This document shows positions 5,807 to 50,351 of a stretch of 64,000 bases of DNA, piece after piece. Where the stretch lies: positions 186,001-250,000 of IMG/VR virus record IMGVR_UViG_3300027834_000005; one strand, given 5' to 3'. The notes under the pieces were generated by a model. That model ran no database searches and was not told the DNA's origin. It saw only the letters and a program-made list of their open reading frames with translations. A program made the translations under genes and the position numbers. Within the stretch, counting starts at the first letter, position 1. The number at the start of each line of letters is the position of its first letter.

Positions 5807-6283
5807 TTGGAGATAAACATGGATAAAATATACGAAATCGGCGTTGACTTCAGCTGTCCAGACCAGAAAGACTATTTTTCTGTCGTCGAGTCAGTGAATG
5901 ATGCTGAGTTTTTAGGCGGAACCTACGCTACTGACGAATCTGCCTTAGACAGAGGGACTCTTTACGTTCATCGCAAGGCTAGTTCATTGGATGAGGCTTT
6001 TAAAGTCGTTCGCGGAGCATTTACTGGTAATGGTAAAGTAATCAATATGAGAGATATGCGTGTTGAGTCATTTACTTTAGATCGTGTTCAAGCTGGATAT
6101 CTTCCAGATGGATATGTGCATGTATCAGATAGAAACCCGAATGCAACTGGTTTTTATTGGTGTTTATGTAGAACAGGTAGTATTAGTGCTAAGTTATCTT
6201 TTCAGAAAGTCCATTTCAAGAAAGAACATAACTCACGTTGGGTTGCCGGTGATTGGACTACTGTCCTAGCATGGGCAACATAA
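5807..6283 (+). CDS. Hypothetical protein
   Basis: ORF downstream of a TTGACT..TACAAT promoter with GGAG SD; likely start 5819. Confidence 0.6.
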   Translation: MEINMDKIYEIGVDFSCPDQKDYFSVVESVNDAEFLGGTYATDESALDRGTLYVHRKASSLDEAFKVVRGAFTGNGKVINMRDMRVESFTLDRVQAGYLPDGYVHVSDRNPNATGFYWCLCRTGSISAKLSFQKVHFKKEHNSRWVAGDWTTVLAWAT

Positions 6284-6623
6284 TGTACGAATGGTTATGT
6301 AAGTTGTTTGTTGGGCACTTACATAAGTGGGATACGGTAAAAGAAGTTAGAGTGTATAATGAAACGTGGGACGGGAAGACATGTGCGGACGTCATTCATT
6401 TACAGTGTGAAATATGTGGTAAAGTGAAACATACGAAAATTAATTACGGTAATGTTTGACACGAACTTGAAAATCATATATAATGCACAGCATGAAGACT
6501 ATGAGTCGTAGCCACATAAGAGGGTTACGGTTATCAGGTTAGATTCAAGTGGGGAGGAATATGTTCTTTCTAGAAGATCAGAACAATCTCCACGTTTTAT
6601 TTTAAATAAAACAAAAAGAATGG

Positions 6624-6737
6624 TTGACAAGAGTAGCAAGTTGTTATATAATGTGCACCTCAAGTCGAGACAGTAAATAAACGTTTTAAAATAAATATTT
6701 ATTTAGTGTTGACAACCAGTTTAAAGCGTGATATAAT
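6624..6737 (+). promoter_or_regulatory. Tandem sigma70-type promoters (rrn P1/P2-like) driving the ncRNA/tRNA unit
   Basis: TTGACA-N17-TATAAT at ~6624-6652 and ~6708-6737; GC-rich discriminator GCGCCC after the second. Confidence 0.75.
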
Positions 6738-6804
6738 ATGCGCCCTCAGAGACTAAATCAATACGATCTTCGGATCTTAATGATTTGATCTTTGATCAAC
6801 AAGT

Positions 6805-7712
6805 TTAAGGATGTATAATCCTACAGCCGTAGTAATGCGGGGAAGGGCGGATCTACTAACAGACCGTCACCAGTTAACCTTTGGTTTTCGGGTAAATTAT
6901 GCAAGCCGAGTTACCTGTGACTTCGTACAAACGGAGAACATGGTGTAAGCATCAGGGGTAAAATGAGATCAGGGCAACGCTGAGATCTTAGTCGGAGATG
7001 AGAATTTCCTTCACTCATACGCCTTATCGGGCAGATGTGATACCAGCAGTGACAAAGGGTAGGGTAATTGTTTGAGTCAGTGATGACAAGAGCTTTTATT
7101 CATTCTAGAGTGATCCTTCGGGTGACCTTGTTAGATGAACAGGTGTTAAAACTTGGGAGTCTTGAAAGAACGTACGGATTAGCCTCATCGGGTGAAAGTA
7201 CATAGAGATGTTGTGTATTCTGTCGCTAGAAATAGTTATGGAGCATTGTCAGCACACGTCTTGGTTAGATACAACTTAACGGTTTAGCTCAGTTGGTAGA
7301 GCGCTTGATTCAGACTCAAGAGGTCGGTGGTTCAAATCCATTACTCGTTTACTTAATTAAAGTAAAAAAAACGCAAAGTTGTTGACGGCATAGAAGAGAA
7401 AATATCGTAATCCCGTGCATCCTCGGATGAACACGTGGTCAAAGAGAACCTGCAAAGTGATCTTTGGTTTGAAGGATTCTGCACTTTGGGCTGCAACCCT
7501 TAACTGCCTGCGAAGGTAGAAGGAAAGAAGAATTCAGAGTATCTCTATGTGACAGTGGAACCGCCTTTCCACTTAAAATAAGGCCGATATGGTAAGATAC
7601 TGGGATGGACCTACGGGTTGTCTCAGTGGATAAGTTCTTAACCGTGCATGAGCAATGTACGAGGTACGGGAACGTAAAGACTTACCGATTGTACGTATAA
7701 TCTCAACGTATT
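6805..7712 (+). ncRNA. GOLLD-like giant structured RNA (~900 nt) with an embedded tRNA-like domain
   Basis: No ORF of 60 aa or more in any frame; many GNRA/UUCG-capped hairpins; long-range pairing GGTAAG/CTTACC near the 3' end; next to a tRNA cluster; ends TAATCTCAACGTA-T-run. Boundaries are approximate. Confidence 0.6.
7278..7350 (+). tRNA. tRNA-like element (anticodon CAG, short variable loop, no CCA) inside the giant ncRNA
   Basis: AACGGTT-TAGCTCAGTTGGTAGAGC-CTTGA TTCAGAC TCAAG-GGTGG TTCAAAT CCATT-ACTCGTT. Confidence 0.6.
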
Positions 7713-7720
7713 TTTATTTT

Positions 7721-7861
7721 AAAGTTCTTAGTGGTTGGTATTTGAAGAGAAAGGGGATAGGTTAGCTGTCGCAGTGATATGCGGTCCTCAATAAATATCA
7801 TAAACGTCCTACATCTGCTAGGATTTGGCCAACACTGATAGTATCAACCCCTAAGAATTTT
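7721..7861 (+). ncRNA. Putative ~140 nt structured RNA closed by a long terminal stem
   Basis: AAAGTTCTTAGTGGTTGGTAT pairs with GTATCAACCCCTAAGAATTT. Confidence 0.45.
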
Positions 7862-8081
7862 TTACTTTATGTGGATATCGTTATGATAATTACAGCTAGA
7901 GATTTAATGCCGAAGTACGGTGATGACGAAGATGATCTGTCATTATCAGACGTAGGACGTATAGAATCTCAGATAGAGAGTAACTTAGCGCAGTCTAAGC
8001 AAATACTTGAAGATTTGGACACCGTTAAAGAGGAATTAAACTTCCTTCGACGTATAGTTCGCTTCTTACGTTAGATAATAT

Positions 8082-8157
8082 GCTTGCGTAGCTCAGTTGG
8101 TAGAGCAGCTCACTTGTAATGAGCAGGTCACAGGTTCGACTCCTGCCGCAAGCTCCA
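8082..8157 (+). tRNA. tRNA-Thr(TGT)
   Basis: Cloverleaf, GCTCA CTTGTAA TGAGC, CCA end. Confidence 0.95.
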
Positions 8158-11289: not shown

Positions 11290-11410
11290 TTGACAGGGAC
11301 GTGATATAGTGATATAATTCGTCCCATATTAAGAAATACTCATTTTGAGATAAAAACTTCTGAAAATGATAAATAAAAGTATTGACAAAGTGTTTAAAGC
11401 ACTGTATAAT
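11290..11410 (+). promoter_or_regulatory. Promoter stack for tRNA cluster 1 (two sigma70 promoters plus a late TGATAAATA)
   Basis: TTGACA-N17-TATAAT at 11290-11318 and 11382-11410; TGATAAATA ~11367. Confidence 0.8.
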
Positions 11411-12430: not shown

Positions 12431-12507
12431 GCGACGGTGATCCAATTGGTAGAGGTGCTAGGTTCAAGTTCTAGTTGTTGAGGGTTCGACTCCCTCTCGT
12501 CGTACCA
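12431..12507 (+). tRNA. tRNA-Leu(CAA), short variable arm
   Basis: CTAGG TTCAAGT TCTAG, ACCA. Confidence 0.8.
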
Positions 12508-16973: not shown

Positions 16974-17097
16974 TTGACAACTACTACATAACGTTGTATA
17001 ATAGTCGGCATCAAATGAACGAAAACTTGTTTTAGACAAAAAAAGTTCAAAAATGATAAATAAAAGTATTGACAACGATTGTAATACGTTGTATAAT
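16974..17097 (+). promoter_or_regulatory. Promoter stack for tRNA cluster 2 (two sigma70 promoters plus a late TGATAAATA)
   Basis: TTGACA-N17-TATAAT at 16974-17002 and 17069-17097; AAAATGATAAATAAAAGTATTGACAA is shared with the cluster 1 stack. Confidence 0.8.
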
Positions 17098-32827: not shown

Positions 32828-34495
32828 ATGACGGTACGATTACTAACAAAACCAGCATTTGAAGAAAAAGAGATTATCCAAGCACCCGCTTTATTGGATT
32901 TTTATAAAGCATTCCATCATCTTGCCTATCAAGACGGTGTGGAAGAGGTTGTTATCAACTTCACGGGTCGCAGCGGTAACCACAGTAACATCAAAGGCGG
33001 ATCTACGTACATGTGGGCCGGTCTTCAATCATTTATCAATGAAATCATTGTAGGTGAATGGAATAAGTTCTTTGCGGCAACTAAAGAACAGGCAGTAGCT
33101 GATTATAAGCGTGTTAATGAAGCCGGTTTAGGCGTAGTATGCGATACTAGCCATCTTGAAGCACTACATGACCTTGGATATATGCCTTTAGAGTTTAGAG
33201 GTCTATTGGAAGGGGTAGAAGTGCCATACGGCGTGGCAGCAATGACTTGCCGCAACACAATTGCCGAGTTTTACTTCCTACCGAACATGATTGAGACTAT
33301 CATGTCTGATGAAATCTGGCCAGTTCAGACTTCATTGACTACTGCGACTGAGTACATGCGTACTTTGAGTGAATTTGCCGCAATCGATGGTACTCCAGAA
33401 GGGTTACTTGGGTTCCTTATCCATGATTTCTCTATGCGCGGCATGATGGGTGGCAGAATGACAGGTGGTGCTGCATTATCTGGCATGGGACACTTGATGT
33501 CTGGCTTTGTAGGAAGCGACACAGTGCCTGCTGCATTGGCTCTGGAGAAGAACTACGGCGCTTACCTAGGCTTAGATCGTCCTTACGAAACAATCGCCTC
33601 AGTGAACGCTACGGAGCACAGTGTGCAGTGTTCTTTCAATAACAATGACTTGGCTTACTACCGTCACTGTATGAAAGTATCGCCTACTGGCATCCTTAGC
33701 TTAGTATCTGACGGTTATGACTTCTGGAAGCTTATTGCTGAAGTATTACCGGCACTTAAAAACGAGATTATGTCTCGTGACGGTAAAATCGTTATCCGTC
33801 CAGATAGCGGTGACCCAGCAGACGTGATTTGTGGTCTTCGTGAGAATATTGACTACCGTCGTACCAAAGATGGTAAGGCATACGCGATGAAATACTGGAA
33901 AGGTAGCGCCTTTATGGGTGCTGAGCAGACCGAATACGGTAAAGTAGTTAAAGAAGCAGCTCCTACTATCCCTGATATGGAAGTGAAAGGTTTAATTCAA
34001 GTATTATGGGAAATGTTTGGTGGTACTGAGTCTGGTGTTGTTGGCGGTAAGGTCTATAAGTTCTTAGACTCTCATATCGGCGCGATTTACGGCGATTCTA
34101 TCACTCTTGAGCGTCAACGTGACATTTATACACGTTTACACGCAAAAGGCTTCGCGGTAGGTAACATTGTATTGGGTGTTGGTTCTTTTACTTACCAATA
34201 TGTTACTCGTGATACTCATGGGTCTGCTGTTAAAGCGACTAATATGATTTTGAAAGGCGTAGATACTCCTATCAGCAAAGAAGTTAAGGGTGATGCGGTT
34301 AAAAAGTCTGCGAAAGGTCGTTTAGTTGTTAAGCGTATCGATAATAAGTACGTTCAATTCGATGAAGCTACTCCTGCGGGTGTTGAGGCTGACGATAATC
34401 AGCACCAACGAGTATGGATGGACGGTGAATGGATCAGAATCCAAACACTTAAGGACGTTCGTACTAATGTTAAGGAAACTTTAGAACCAGCTTGA
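32828..34495 (+). CDS. nadV: Nicotinamide phosphoribosyltransferase-like protein (Nampt/Namat)
   Basis: DFYK..H, HDFSMRG, GSDT, ATEHS, VSDGYD, IRPDSGDP, IYGDSIT, KKSAKG motifs. Confidence 0.92.
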   Translation: MTVRLLTKPAFEEKEIIQAPALLDFYKAFHHLAYQDGVEEVVINFTGRSGNHSNIKGGSTYMWAGLQSFINEIIVGEWNKFFAATKEQAVADYKRVNEAGLGVVCDTSHLEALHDLGYMPLEFRGLLEGVEVPYGVAAMTCRNTIAEFYFLPNMIETIMSDEIWPVQTSLTTATEYMRTLSEFAAIDGTPEGLLGFLIHDFSMRGMMGGRMTGGAALSGMGHLMSGFVGSDTVPAALALEKNYGAYLGLDRPYETIASVNATEHSVQCSFNNNDLAYYRHCMKVSPTGILSLVSDGYDFWKLIAEVLPALKNEIMSRDGKIVIRPDSGDPADVICGLRENIDYRRTKDGKAYAMKYWKGSAFMGAEQTEYGKVVKEAAPTIPDMEVKGLIQVLWEMFGGTESGVVGGKVYKFLDSHIGAIYGDSITLERQRDIYTRLHAKGFAVGNIVLGVGSFTYQYVTRDTHGSAVKATNMILKGVDTPISKEVKGDAVKKSAKGRLVVKRIDNKYVQFDEATPAGVEADDNQHQRVWMDGEWIRIQTLKDVRTNVKETLEPA

Positions 34496-43759: not shown

Positions 43760-44090
43760 GCATGAAAAGAATTTTTCTCTATAATAAGAGAAATGAAAGA
43801 ATAACTGTATGAAACTAGGATGAGCAAGGAGACACGCGGGTTCGACTCCCGCCGCTTCCACCAAAGTGATATTAAACGTGAAGTTTTTTGGATCTGTTAT
43901 GGGGGCGTTTTGGATTCGACCTTCTTGTGATTTGAGGTGGACAGTTCGGCAAATGTGAAAGTCGTTAAGAGAAACCCTTTTGGGTAAACTCTCATAGAAA
44001 CACTAAATATAATTGCTAATGAAGAATTATACGCTCAAGCTGCCTAATCGCGCTTGATGAGGTTAGAGTCACCTTATTATCCAACGACAC
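43760..44090 (+). ncRNA. ssrA: Two-piece (circularly permuted) tmRNA; tag (A)ANEELYAQAA*
   Basis: 3' TLD piece GCGGGTTCGACTCCCGCCGCTTCCACCA ends at 43863; 5' piece GGGGGCG..GGATTCGAC starts at 43901; tag ORF 44015-44047; terminator hairpin 44093-44117. Confidence 0.9.
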
Positions 44091-44130
44091 ACGAATGGGG
44101 ACTTAATGTCCCCATTCACTTATCAGGGAT

Positions 44131-44481
44131 TTGATAATGGACAAGCACGGCCCAGTTTTAATTAATATGATACGTAGAACAGTACCGAAATTGATAGCGG
44201 AAGATCTAGTGGGTGTACAGCCTATGATATCACCTATTGCCCGATGGGAAAAATATCATGTAGTTTGGGTAATCACGACAAGCGGTGAGTTGGTATGTAA
44301 TGGCGATGTGTATATGCTAGCGAATTACGTCAACGACAAATTCACATGTAACCTAGGTGAAGTGCTAAGCGAAGAAGAGTATTTCCTAAGAGAGCTTGAT
44401 GGCTCCAATAAAGAATTAGATAATATTACTGACGTAGGTAAGGTTTTTTCCCTAAAGACTAGATATAACAGAAACATATAG
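44131..44481 (+). CDS. Small protein carrying a T4 gp23 Gol-region-like segment
   Basis: PVLINMIRRTVPKLIAEDLVGVQPMISP ... GKVFSLKTRY. Confidence 0.65.
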   Translation: MIMDKHGPVLINMIRRTVPKLIAEDLVGVQPMISPIARWEKYHVVWVITTSGELVCNGDVYMLANYVNDKFTCNLGEVLSEEEYFLRELDGSNKELDNITDVGKVFSLKTRYNRNI

Positions 44482-48371: not shown

Positions 48372-50351
48372 ATGCGCAATAATAATGATTTCACAGACAC
48401 CAGAAAGGTAAGGGCGATTCAGCTAAGACAGGAAGGTTCAAGCTTTAGTGAGATATCTAGAGATTTGGGCATTCCGTCTACTACTGTGCGTTACTTTATC
48501 AACCGTAAAACCCACGTTGAGTGGTGGAAGAAGTACAATAAAGGTAGTTTTTCCAAGATTTGCAATACTATGGGCTTTGTGTCAACCGCTATACCACAGC
48601 CTATCCCTGCAGACGCTAACGACTATACCTTATGTAACGACAGCATAAAGAAATTAGCTGTTGATATGAAAGAAAATATGTATATGTCCAATGCTAAGAT
48701 AGCTAAAGAGCTTAATTTGGAAGAAACATGTGTCAGACGCTTCTTTTCCAAGATAACTTATCAGGAATGGTGGGAAAATCTAGGGGATGCGAGTGGAACA
48801 GGTTCATTAAGTGATGATGCGGTAGTTGATGACGGCGCTGAGATCCCAGAAGAGCCTGTATTTATGGGCGAAATGGACGAAATCCAGTATGACCATAACT
48901 ATCTTGACAAAAACACAGTTTTTGTGATAAGCTCAGCACAGAATAACACCCATGTTAATATTGAATTCATGGATGCGCTTGAATCTTACTGTTCTCATAA
49001 TGATGCGGAGCTGTTGATATCGCCATTCTACTACAATACCAGTGGTATGTTAGGTAATAAAACGGACGAAGCTGTATATGACGACAGAGTGGAACCTTAT
49101 TTAGTTAAGGAACCTATTAAATTGTGTGATTATTTAGGCGGATTGGTATTTTGTGCTGAATTGGATATTTTACCAACGGCAGTAAACCCATTTTCAGGCC
49201 TACATACGTATACTAAGCTGGCTAGTAGTATTATCCCTCATACTAGAATGCAGTTAGAGTCTGTGGTCACGCCTAAGTCAGATGTGTGTAGAATGTTGTA
49301 TTCTACGGGCACTACGACCATGCGTAACTATGTGCAGCGTAAAGCTGGGCAAAAGGCTAGTTTCCATCACGTGTTCGGAGCGTTAGTCGTTGAGATTGAC
49401 CATAAGAACCAGTGCTGGTACGTGAGACAGCTTAATTCAGATAAAGACGGGTCTATCCAAGACCTAGATACGGTTTATATGCCAGACGGATCTGTTAGAA
49501 GCGGAGAAATTGAAGCTATTAACTGGGGTGATCTTCATGCTGAGAAGTGTGAACAGGAACAGATGGATCTTTGTTTCGGTGAAAAGGGCATTCTTAACTC
49601 TTTACAGCCAAGATACCAATTTGCGCATGATTTAAGTGACTTCACACCACGTAATCATCACAATAGGAAAGATCCTCACTTCTTGTATAAGACATCTAAC
49701 AGTGCTATACGTACTGTAGAGGATGGTTTGGTTCAAGCAGCTGATGTTATCAAAGAAATGTCTCGTGATTGGTGTGAAACTGTAATAGTAAACTCAAATC
49801 ATGATAATGCTCTTGTTAAATGGTTAAAAGAAGCCGATTATAGAACAGATCCAGACAACGCCAAGTTCTTCTTGACCGCGCAGCTGGAATGTTACGACGC
49901 TATTGACAGAAATGACAATAACTTCAGTATATTCGAGAAGTCTTTGACTGAATTAATCAGAGATCCAGTGGATATGTCCGCAGCCAACGTTAAATTCTTG
50001 AGAGAGGATGAATCTTTCAAAATTTGCACGTCAAAGATGGATGATTCTATAGAATGTGGATTCCACGGGCACACAGGTAATAACGGAGCGCGTGGGTCAG
50101 TAATGTCCTACCAACGTCTTAGTAGCAGAGTGAATATAGGCCATTCTCACTCAGCAACGATCAAAGACGGTGTTTATCAAGCCGGTGTGACAGGTAACCT
50201 AGACATGGGTTATAATATTGGTGCTAGTAGCTGGAGCCACTCACATATCGTGACTTATGCTAACGGTAAACGTACTATTATAACTACGCACGGTGAAGGA
50301 TGGAGACTACAGGCAGATGATAGTCAAAATTCTTTACATGTGGGTACTTGA
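48372..50351 (+). CDS. T5 A1-like metallophosphoesterase nuclease with N-terminal HTH repeats
   Basis: ISSAQNNT, WGDLH, SNHD, HGH.G.NG.RGS, GHSHS, LDMGYN.G.SSWSHSH. Confidence 0.75.
   Translation: MRNNNDFTDTRKVRAIQLRQEGSSFSEISRDLGIPSTTVRYFINRKTHVEWWKKYNKGSFSKICNTMGFVSTAIPQPIPADANDYTLCNDSIKKLAVDMKENMYMSNAKIAKELNLEETCVRRFFSKITYQEWWENLGDASGTGSLSDDAVVDDGAEIPEEPVFMGEMDEIQYDHNYLDKNTVFVISSAQNNTHVNIEFMDALESYCSHNDAELLISPFYYNTSGMLGNKTDEAVYDDRVEPYLVKEPIKLCDYLGGLVFCAELDILPTAVNPFSGLHTYTKLASSIIPHTRMQLESVVTPKSDVCRMLYSTGTTTMRNYVQRKAGQKASFHHVFGALVVEIDHKNQCWYVRQLNSDKDGSIQDLDTVYMPDGSVRSGEIEAINWGDLHAEKCEQEQMDLCFGEKGILNSLQPRYQFAHDLSDFTPRNHHNRKDPHFLYKTSNSAIRTVEDGLVQAADVIKEMSRDWCETVIVNSNHDNALVKWLKEADYRTDPDNAKFFLTAQLECYDAIDRNDNNFSIFEKSLTELIRDPVDMSAANVKFLREDESFKICTSKMDDSIECGFHGHTGNNGARGSVMSYQRLSSRVNIGHSHSATIKDGVYQAGVTGNLDMGYNIGASSWSHSHIVTYANGKRTIITTHGEGWRLQADDSQNSLHVGT

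What the first reader, a model, noticed from the sequence alone, without database searches (positions are those of the whole stretch)
6805..7712. GOLLD-like giant ncRNA with an embedded tRNA-like (CAG) domain under rRNA-style promoters
Seen: ~900 nt with no ORF, dense hairpins, an internal tRNA fold lacking CCA (7278-7350), and tandem consensus promoters upstream. Established: GOLLD RNAs are phage-associated, lie next to tRNAs and can embed tRNAs. The family assignment is an inference.
Basis: partly seen in the sequence, partly recalled or inferred. Interest (0 to 1): 0.7.

Follow-up and report, generated by a model that had tools for sequence, protein, structure and literature searches.

The report
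Phage GOLLD RNA with embedded tRNA

Summary
Window 6744-7712 (+) has no ORF over 47 aa. It carries a canonical cloverleaf at 7278-7350 (anticodon CAG, no encoded CCA). Three perfect TTGACA-17-TATAAT promoters lie upstream.

The Rfam GOLLD model (RF02032) matches 7205-7709 end to end at 122.4 bits, E 2.5e-33. That is below the curated cut-off of 150 bits, so routine annotation misses it. The tRNA sits in the model's variable linker, a placement already described for GOLLD.

A homologue on an independent marine-sediment contig (L121) keeps two of the promoters, conserved blocks of the 5' region, the linker tRNA and the 3' domain, with compensatory changes.

The RNA probably starts near 6744, not 6805.

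The embedded tRNA is atypical in four ways:
- It is the only one of 35 window tRNAs without an encoded CCA.
- It has a short-arm body with U73, which does not fit leucine identity.
- Its acceptor stem is the weakest in the window.
- Its anticodon differs among relatives (CAG, N-U-U, CCA, UGU).

By homology the RNA should form the 14-mer nanocage seen by cryo-EM, with the tRNA inside. Function remains unknown. Verdict: new member of a known kind.

The parts
6456..6484 (+). Promoter P1, a perfect TTGACA-17-TATAAT. It probably drives a separate short unit (6491-6606) that ends in a terminator-like hairpin.
   Evidence: Only its -10 region could be aligned in L121.
6624..6652 (+). Promoter P2, a perfect sigma-70 consensus reading towards the GOLLD gene.
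   Evidence: L121 keeps TTGACT-17-TATAAT at the aligned place.
6709..6737 (+). Promoter P3, a perfect consensus with an extended -10 TG. It is the nearest promoter; the inferred transcription start is about 6744.
   Evidence: L121 has a 12/12 site at the aligned place. Win-L121 identity is 66% within the promoter itself (6709-6737), 38% in the spacer upstream of it (6653-6708) and 72% from the inferred start (6744-6830).
6744..7712 (+). Whole GOLLD RNA gene, about 969 nt. Both ends are inferred, not mapped.
   Evidence: No ORF over 47 aa. Conserved against L121. The Rfam match ends at 7709.
6744..6830 (+). 5' leader with three small conserved hairpins.
   Evidence: 72% identity to L121, with one compensatory pair in each hairpin. 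In L121 and X4 the -35 and -10 letters are not kept.
6831..7204 (+). Lineage-specific 5' region. Conserved blocks lie at 6864-6943 and 7144-7204; the variable middle is at 6976-7130.
   Evidence: No similarity to the 5' regions of 119 other GOLLD loci. The global fold is not established.
7205..7267 (+). Hairpin that closes the 5' part (Rfam model positions 1-63).
   Evidence: 79% identity to L121, with compensatory changes.
7278..7350 (+). tRNA-shaped module in the variable linker. Anticodon CAG, short variable arm, U73, no encoded CCA, acceptor stem with one mismatch and one G-U pair.
7351..7364 (+). A-rich remainder of the linker.
7365..7709 (+). Conserved GOLLD 3' domain. The long-range helix pairs 7387-7397 with 7541-7551. 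It also holds the GUGGAUAAG motif and the terminal loop UAAUCUCA.
   Evidence: The CAUAG/CUAUG pairing in the window becomes CACGG/CCGUG in L121. Covarying helices across 12 GOLLDs.
7710..7722 (+). U-rich tract after the last hairpin; possible end of the transcript.
   Evidence: Sequence only. The terminator scan did not call it.

Best explanation
This is the GOLLD RNA gene of a roughly 347-kb marine jumbo phage.

Shown. A conserved 3' domain (7365-7709) matches the GOLLD covariance model. A hairpin and a variable linker precede it, and the linker holds a tRNA-shaped module (7278-7350). Upstream lies an ORF-free region of about 460 nt that is conserved in a relative. Tandem perfect sigma-70 promoters lie upstream. 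The gene heads a 37-tRNA island.

Inferred. Host RNA polymerase starts at about 6744 from P3, with read-in from P2, and makes an RNA of about 970 nt. By homology with the cryo-EM structure of GOLLD env-38, fourteen copies assemble into a closed RNA-only cage. In that structure the 3' domains form the rings, the 5' regions form the caps and the linker points inwards. Here that would place fourteen tRNA-shaped modules inside.

Most speculative. The module mostly stays tethered rather than being released as an ordinary leucine tRNA. The particle would then act in the phage's takeover of translation, alongside its tRNAs and tmRNA, by presenting or sequestering tRNA-like surfaces. The confidence below is for identity and architecture. 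For this mode of action I would give about 0.25.
For: - RF02032 matches full length, 122.4 bits, E 2.5e-33 (again).
- The homologue L121 also hits GOLLD (E 7e-18, cut by the contig end) with a tRNA at the same place.
- Two compensatory pairs occur in the long-range helix between the window and L121.
- Across 12 GOLLDs, 23 of 26 alifold pairs covary.
- Promoters.
- Context: 37 tRNAs plus a tmRNA in a 347-kb phage.
- Literature: GOLLD forms a 14-mer cage, the linker lies inside, and tRNAs are sometimes in the linker. A pseudo-tRNA lies inside a mycobacterial GOLLD.
- A 432-nt contig from a metatranscriptome lies on 7053-7437 at about 94% identity, across both ends of the tRNA.
- Atypical tRNA features.
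Against: - The score is under Rfam's gathering cut-off.
- No transcript ends were mapped. The RNA contig comes from a relative at depth 4, in a library that may hold DNA, so transcription is not proven.
- The 5' region has no detectable similarity to other GOLLD 5' regions. Single-sequence folds of it do not transfer between the window and L121 any better than slid controls. Whether it builds the same cap is therefore unknown.
- Nothing here tests cage formation or any function.
- Some embedded tRNAs in other GOLLDs do encode CCA (L073, L051, XM05). That favours release as working tRNAs, at least in those phages.
Confidence: 0.88

Rival explanations
1. The linker element is an ordinary working tRNA gene. 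The GOLLD transcript would double as its precursor. RNase P and an RNase Z/BN-type enzyme cut it out, which would also split GOLLD into its 5' and 3' halves. The host CCA-adding enzyme then completes it, and it decodes CUG.
For: - The cloverleaf is canonical (60.7 bits), with U8, A14, G18G19, U33, a purine at 37 and the GTTCAAATC T-loop.
- Embedded tRNAs in other GOLLDs include CCA-encoding ones (L073 group, L051, XM05).
- Anticodons in one subclade (CUU, UCU, UAU, CUA) read A-rich codons. Those are typically rare in G+C-rich hosts such as Erythrobacter (own knowledge) and could be useful.
- The genome has no other CAG tRNA.
Against: - It is the only one of 35 window tRNAs without an encoded CCA, and the phage has no CCA-adding enzyme.
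- U73 and a short variable arm conflict with the bacterial leucine identity set (A73; established knowledge). The phage's UAG and UAA leucine tRNAs are 87 nt with A73.
- Its acceptor stem is the weakest in the window.
- The anticodon is not conserved among relatives.
- An RNA-library contig spans both tRNA junctions.
- A mycobacterial GOLLD pseudo-tRNA gave no detectable product.
Confidence: 0.3
2. It is not a true GOLLD. It would be a different giant RNA class that shares only a few 3' motifs with GOLLD, since the match falls below the family cut-off and the 5' half is unrelated.
For: 122.4 bits is below the 150-bit gathering score. The 5' region has no similarity to 119 other loci.
Against: - The match is global (model 1-416), with E 2.5e-33 and only about 13 non-canonical pairs flagged.
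- Loci that pass the cut-off grade into it: L105 at 198.6, L037 at 184.7 and L051 at 180.1 bits, all tRNA-bearing.
- A variable 5' region is itself a described trait of GOLLD.
Confidence: 0.05
3. There is no large RNA. The region would be a long promoter-rich spacer with a degenerate tRNA gene, and the model match would be fortuitous.
For: Transcript ends are unmapped. The terminator scan finds no site at 7712.
Against: - E 2.5e-33.
- Block-wise conservation with compensatory changes in a relative whose flanking protein is only 50% identical.
- Win-L121 identity is higher from 6744 onward (72% over 6744-6830) than in the spacer upstream of P3 (38% over 6653-6708).
- A contig from an RNA library lies on the region.
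Confidence: 0.02

Closest known systems
GOLLD RNA (Rfam RF02032), e.g. env-38 solved by cryo-EM (Kretsch et al., Nature 2025, PMC12286853)
   Same: Full-length match of the 3' domain, with the preceding hairpin and variable linker. Total size over 800 nt. Phage origin next to a tRNA island. A linker that can hold a tRNA.
   Different: The score is under the gathering cut-off. The 5' region has no detectable sequence similarity. It has its own tandem consensus promoters. The cage was not tested.
GOLLD with an internal pseudo-tRNA in Mycobacterium tRNA arrays (PMC6582537; Morgado et al. 2020, cited)
   Same: GOLLD inside a horizontally moving tRNA cluster, with a tRNA-like gene inside the RNA.
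   Different: Actinobacterial chromosome or prophage setting. Here it is a marine jumbo phage, and the internal element is a clean cloverleaf.
Unannotated GOLLD of Erythrobacter phage XM05 (PV416404.1) and its IMG/VR relatives L073, L128, L129 and L037
   Same: tRNA in the linker immediately before the ACGCAAAG start of the 3' domain. A similarly low Rfam score (120.4 bits). The anticodon differs among relatives on a conserved body.
   Different: The XM05 and L073 tRNAs encode CCA. The 5' regions are unrelated. The host is an alphaproteobacterium.
ROOL RNA (the other phage nanocage RNA)
   Same: A large ORF-free phage RNA near tRNA islands that forms a cage.
   Different: No match of the window to ROOL at E <= 10. 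Sequence and fold are unrelated.

Membership tests
GOLLD RNA (RF02032) | Covariance-model score at or above Rfam's gathering score (150 bits) | tested here: not met
   122.4 bits, absent from the gathering run. E is 2.5e-33 and the alignment is global. By the E < 1e-5 rule of the published census it counts as a member.
GOLLD RNA (RF02032) | Conserved 3'-domain architecture: long-range helix, GCAA-type loops, the GUGGAUAAG motif and the terminal UAAUCUCA loop | tested here: met
   All model helices are aligned, with about 13 non-canonical pairs flagged. The long-range helix covaries between the window and L121. Both motifs are present.
GOLLD RNA (RF02032) | Large size with a less conserved 5' region joined through a variable linker | tested here: met
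   About 460 nt of ORF-free DNA upstream, conserved in L121. The linker is model positions 64-127. The fold of the 5' region is not established.
GOLLD RNA (RF02032) | Phage or prophage location next to tRNA genes | tested here: met
   A 347-kb virus record. The gene is the first element of a 37-tRNA island.
GOLLD RNA (RF02032) | Made as a stable, abundant RNA | tested here: inconclusive
   One 432-nt contig of a relative in a metatranscriptome covers 7053-7437. DNA carry-over is not excluded.
GOLLD RNA (RF02032) | Homo-14-mer nanocage with D7 symmetry | not testable with these tools
   Known for env-38 only. The complex predictor's size limit (1000 residues) excludes even a dimer.
ROOL RNA | Match to the ROOL covariance model | tested here: not met
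   No hit at E <= 10 in 6400-8100.
Working bacterial-type tRNA-Leu | Cloverleaf with canonical tertiary nucleotides | tested here: met
   60.7 bits. Structure shown.
Working bacterial-type tRNA-Leu | Leucine identity: A73 and a long variable arm, as in the phage's own Leu-UAG and Leu-UAA | tested here: not met
   U73 and 73 nt with a 5-nt variable region. The identity rules are established knowledge and were not assayed.
Working bacterial-type tRNA-Leu | Encoded 3' CCA, as in the rest of this genome's tRNAs | tested here: not met
   Absent here; 34 of 35 window tRNAs have it. No phage CCA-adding enzyme.
Working bacterial-type tRNA-Leu | Anticodon kept among orthologues | tested here: not met
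   Window CAG; X4 has T at positions 35 and 36; L121 CCA; L105 TGT.

The most novel reading that the evidence does not exclude
The linker element may not be a conventional tRNA gene. It could be a tethered tRNA mimic displayed fourteen-fold inside an RNA cage, with its anticodon arm under diversifying selection. Relatives keep the acceptor and D arms but swap the anticodon arm: CAG / N-U-U / CCA / UGU in this lineage, and CUU / UCU / UAU / CUA in another. Such a device could bait or absorb host factors that read anticodon loops, such as anticodon nucleases of anti-phage defence or modification enzymes. In the window's case it would place a leucine anticodon on a non-leucine body.
Probability: 0.12. 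Interest if true: 0.8.

Novelty: new member of a known kind. Interest (0 to 1): 0.42.

Why it matters
GOLLD is one of the few natural RNAs known to build a closed cage by itself, and its function has been open since 2009.

This copy adds little to the definition of the family, but it is useful in three ways.

1. Divergent, tRNA-bearing GOLLDs score at 120-125 bits, under the Rfam cut-off. They therefore go unannotated, even in cultured phages: XM05 at 120.4 bits has no feature at the site, and neither do X1 and XacN1.
2. The gene carries its own consensus sigma-70 promoters, so it could probably be expressed in a laboratory bacterium (e.g. E. coli) without the unknown host.
3. The comparative series gives a concrete handle on what the linker cargo does. 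The embedded tRNAs have a conserved body, a changing anticodon, often no CCA and weak acceptor stems. The question to test is whether the tRNA is released or stays caged.

Tried and rejected
- Default Rfam run: GOLLD is not listed because the score is under the cut-off. The E-value run was needed.
- blastn of the region against GenBank phages: only generic tRNA hits.
- Relatives through neighbouring or large proteins in IMG/VR: none found.
- A subfamily DNA pattern found nothing in IMG/VR. In JGI metagenomes it found only the phage's own 410-kb contig.
- blastn and nhmmer of the 5' region against 119 GOLLD loci: no similarity. The same holds against the full 5' region of the nearest 3'-domain relative, apart from the last 55 nt or so.
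- Testing single-sequence MFE folds of the 5' region on L121: 33 changed pairs kept against 60 broken, no better than slid controls. I therefore claim no global 5' fold.
- Testing the alifold model with X4's substitutions: most fall in unpaired columns. Several long-range pairs look broken, but X4's own-only differences beyond 7032 were not printed, so this is inconclusive.
- Relaxed ARAGORN thresholds (80%) gave many control hits and were not used.
- The reading of 6792-6819 as a promoter was rejected.

Full report
**What is in the sequence**

The window is bases 186001-250000 of a 347,232-base IMG/VR virus record, estimated 94% complete, 40% G+C.

- Between 6460 and 7870 there is no long ORF. 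Inside 6744-7712 the longest on either strand is 47 aa.
- ARAGORN and the Rfam tRNA model both place a tRNA at exactly 7278-7350 with anticodon CAG.
- Perfect TTGACA-N17-TATAAT sites lie at 6456, 6624 and 6709. A 10/12 site lies at 6792.
- The window holds eight perfect sites against 0.02 expected from shuffles. They stand in tandem groups ahead of tRNA blocks: 6456/6624/6709, 11290/11382 and 16974/17069.
- The whole genome holds 16 perfect sites.
- The 969-nt stretch folds better than shuffles (z -3.5, only 20 shuffles).

**Family assignment**

The default Rfam run lists 33 tRNA matches and a tmRNA (matched by two tmRNA models), but no large RNA. With an E-value threshold, GOLLD (RF02032) aligns from model position 1 to 416 on 7205-7709. 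The score is 122.4 bits and E is 2.5e-33, under the gathering score of 150 (repeated on the genome). Nothing else reaches E <= 10 apart from the tRNA and one noise hit, so ROOL is excluded.

The alignment splits as follows:
- model hairpin 1-63 on 7205-7267;
- the variable linker (model 64-127) across the tRNA;
- the conserved 3' domain on about 7365-7709.

About 13 pairs are flagged as non-canonical.

The low score seems typical of tRNA-bearing members:

| Locus | tRNA in linker | Bits |
|---|---|---|
| L105 | yes | 198.6 |
| L037 | yes | 184.7 |
| L051 | yes | 180.1 |
| L073 | yes | 122.1 |
| Erythrobacter phage XM05 | yes | 120.4 |
| L002 | no | 322.7 |
| L008 | no | 253.8 |

The published census of the family used E < 1e-5. 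By that rule this is a member.

**Independent relatives**

The same DNA, 100% identical, is on a 410-kb JGI contig, a 347-kb ENA contig and a Logan contig. These are not independent.

A true relative came through the neighbouring 158-aa protein. Its 50%-identical homologue P0002 lies on a 2.6-kb Logan contig, L121. L121 carries a homologous GOLLD that is cut at its 3' end.
- It is 75% identical over window 7160-7595.
- It scores 71.3 bits on Rfam GOLLD, E 7e-18.
- It has a tRNA at the same linker position, but with anticodon CCA and again no CCA end.

In alignment A1 the long-range helix reads CAUAG/CUAUG in the window and CACGG/CCGUG in L121. That is two double compensatory changes. An alifold of twelve GOLLD 3' domains including the window finds 26 pairs, 23 of them with compensatory changes.

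Metagenome runs X2, X3 (marine sediment) and X4 (aquatic) hold relatives roughly 85-97% identical (about 90% overall) as short contigs.

**Where the RNA starts and ends**

- P2 and P3 are conserved as promoters in L121: TTGACT-17-TATAAT and a perfect 12/12 site with TG.
- Identity to L121 is 38-48% in the spacers upstream of P3, 66% within P3 itself, and 72% from 6744.
- The 10/12 site at 6792-6819 is not kept. L121 has TAGAAC and TATGAA there, and X4 changes the -10 (6818 A>G).
- Its letters instead form two hairpins, each with a compensatory pair in L121.

The 3' end is placed at the end of the model match (7709), followed by a U-rich run. The terminator scan does not call it. Neither end is mapped.

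**The 5' region**

It is conserved in blocks: 6864-6943 at 70-72%, and 7144-7263 at 57-80%. The middle is variable, 6984-7143 at 32-55%.

Alifold on the two sequences gives 125 pairs, 32 of them compensatory. That method rewards covariation. A fairer test failed: the MFE of one sequence checked on the other gave 33 changed pairs kept against 60 broken, no better than slid controls. X4's substitutions are inconclusive because only part of the list was shown.

There is no sequence similarity to the 5' regions of 119 other GOLLD loci. The nearest 3'-domain relative, L105/L127, shares only the last 55 nt or so. [quoted passage not shown] It also means I cannot say the cap of the cage is built the same way.

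**The embedded tRNA**

It is a clean cloverleaf with the usual tertiary nucleotides. It is atypical in four ways.

1. It is the only one of the 35 window tRNAs without an encoded CCA. The phage has no CCA-adding enzyme.
2. It pairs a leucine anticodon with a 73-nt short-arm body and U73. The phage's Leu-UAG and Leu-UAA tRNAs are 87 nt with A73. A73 is a major leucine identity element in bacteria (established knowledge).
3. Its acceptor stem is the weakest in the window: 2 G-C pairs, one G-U and one mismatch.
4. The anticodon is not conserved.
   - X4, about 90% identical overall, has 7312 A>T and 7313 G>T (positions 35 and 36), plus 7315 C>A, 7303 G>A and 7327 G>A. Position 34 is not known because the list was cut.
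   - L121 has CCA, with three of five anticodon-stem pairs changed on both sides, while the D arm is identical.
   - L105 has UGU.

**A wider look at linker tRNAs**

- A combined T-loop plus GOLLD pattern finds only 12 stretches in all of IMG/VR.
- Their anticodons are CUA, UCU, UAU, CUU, GCA, UGU, an 8-nt loop and an odd loop. A thirteenth linker tRNA, L051 from the first scan, reads GUU.
- Most lack CCA, and the acceptor stems are A/U-rich with a mismatch.
- Related pairs keep the acceptor and D arms but differ in the anticodon arm: L037/L128, L128/L129/XM05 and L051/L131.

That GOLLD linkers can hold tRNAs or pseudo-tRNAs is already in the literature. I did not find the anticodon turnover on a conserved body described in the few GOLLD papers I read (no targeted search was made). 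It rests on few sequences.

**Expression**

A poly(A)-selected marine-sediment metatranscriptome (X5) holds a 432-nt contig, depth 4.3. It lies on 7053-7437 with 19 differences and 5 gaps. It runs from the end of the 5' region through the tRNA into the 3' domain. Nothing from X5 lies on 6440-7052 or 7438-7760.

This fits an unprocessed GOLLD transcript of a close relative. However, the tool warns that DNA can be present in such libraries, so I count it as weak support.

**How it most likely works**

Shown: the family match, the architecture, the promoters and the context.

Inferred from the env-38 structure: fourteen copies form a D7 cage 380 A across. The 3' domains form the rings, the 5' regions form the caps and the linkers face inwards. 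This copy would then hold fourteen tRNA-shaped modules inside.

Inferred from the promoters: strong transcription by host RNA polymerase, together with the tRNA island.

Speculative: the module stays tethered and acts as a tRNA-like surface rather than as a leucine tRNA.

The main rival is that it is cut out and used. The CCA-encoding copies in other GOLLDs and the A-rich-codon anticodons in one subclade favour that view. I put it at about 0.3.

**Verdict**

This is a new, divergent member of a known family with a known kind of insertion. It is not a new class.

Noticed in passing
window 43760-44138 (+): A phage-encoded tmRNA that ARAGORN marks as permuted (two-piece), tag ANEELYAQAA. Rfam scores: tmRNA_permuted 81.6 bits (cut-off 47) and beta_tmRNA 85.5 bits (cut-off 84).
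   Followed up: no
window 6491-6606 (+): A short unit between P1 and P2. It folds into two hairpins, the second followed by GUUUUAUUUU (z -2.75). Positions 6465-6561 show no differences in relatives X2 and X3, while the coding DNA at 6205-6464 shows 39. This is a candidate small RNA of about 105 nt with no Rfam match.
   Followed up: partly
window 11290-11410 and 16974-17097 (+): Two more tandem pairs of perfect sigma-70 consensus promoters, each ahead of a tRNA block. Seven of the genome's 16 perfect sites lie in the 11 kb that begins the tRNA island.
   Followed up: partly
L125 and L126 (JGI contig JGI24723J26617_10000007, 410,284 nt): The same GOLLD pattern occurs twice on one contig, 347,087 nt apart. 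The assembly therefore runs more than once round the genome. The genome unit is about 347.1 kb and is circular or terminally redundant, although IMG/VR calls it linear.
   Followed up: partly
L127:1634-1687 (contig of L105): A type I hammerhead core (CUGAUGAG ... CGAAAC ... GUC) lies about 55 nt after tRNA-His, at the start of that phage's GOLLD 5' region. Rfam gives 26 bits, E 0.001, under its cut-off. A second hammerhead-like core lies near 1445-1480. It might cut the GOLLD 5' end out of a tRNA-array transcript.
   Followed up: partly
L137:1517-2001 (Erythrobacter phage XM05, PV416404.1); L138:1225-1654 (Xanthomonas phage X1); L139:1077-1490 (Xanthomonas phage XacN1): Cultured phages carry GOLLD genes with no annotated feature at the site. 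XM05 scores 120.4 bits and has an unannotated tRNA-Lys(CUU) with CCA in the linker, at L137:1584-1657.
   Followed up: yes
window 12431-12507 (+): A second 'leucine' tRNA (anticodon CAA) is only 77 nt with its CCA, so it has a short variable arm, although it has A73. It may not be a leucine acceptor.
   Followed up: no
window 32828-34495 and 48372-50351 (+): A nicotinamide phosphoribosyltransferase (phrog_448, E 2e-149). Also a T5 A1-like 'DNA transfer protein' (phrog_1745, E 7e-175), up to 49% identical to proteins of phages of Pseudomonas, Shewanella and Vibrio. That hints at a marine gammaproteobacterial host.
   Followed up: no
IMG/VR loci L021, L022, L048, L052, L053, L063, L066, L067, L083, L087, L103, L114: Twelve of the 119 contigs with the GOLLD 3' motif exceed 200 kb. 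GOLLD is therefore common in jumbo phages.
   Followed up: no
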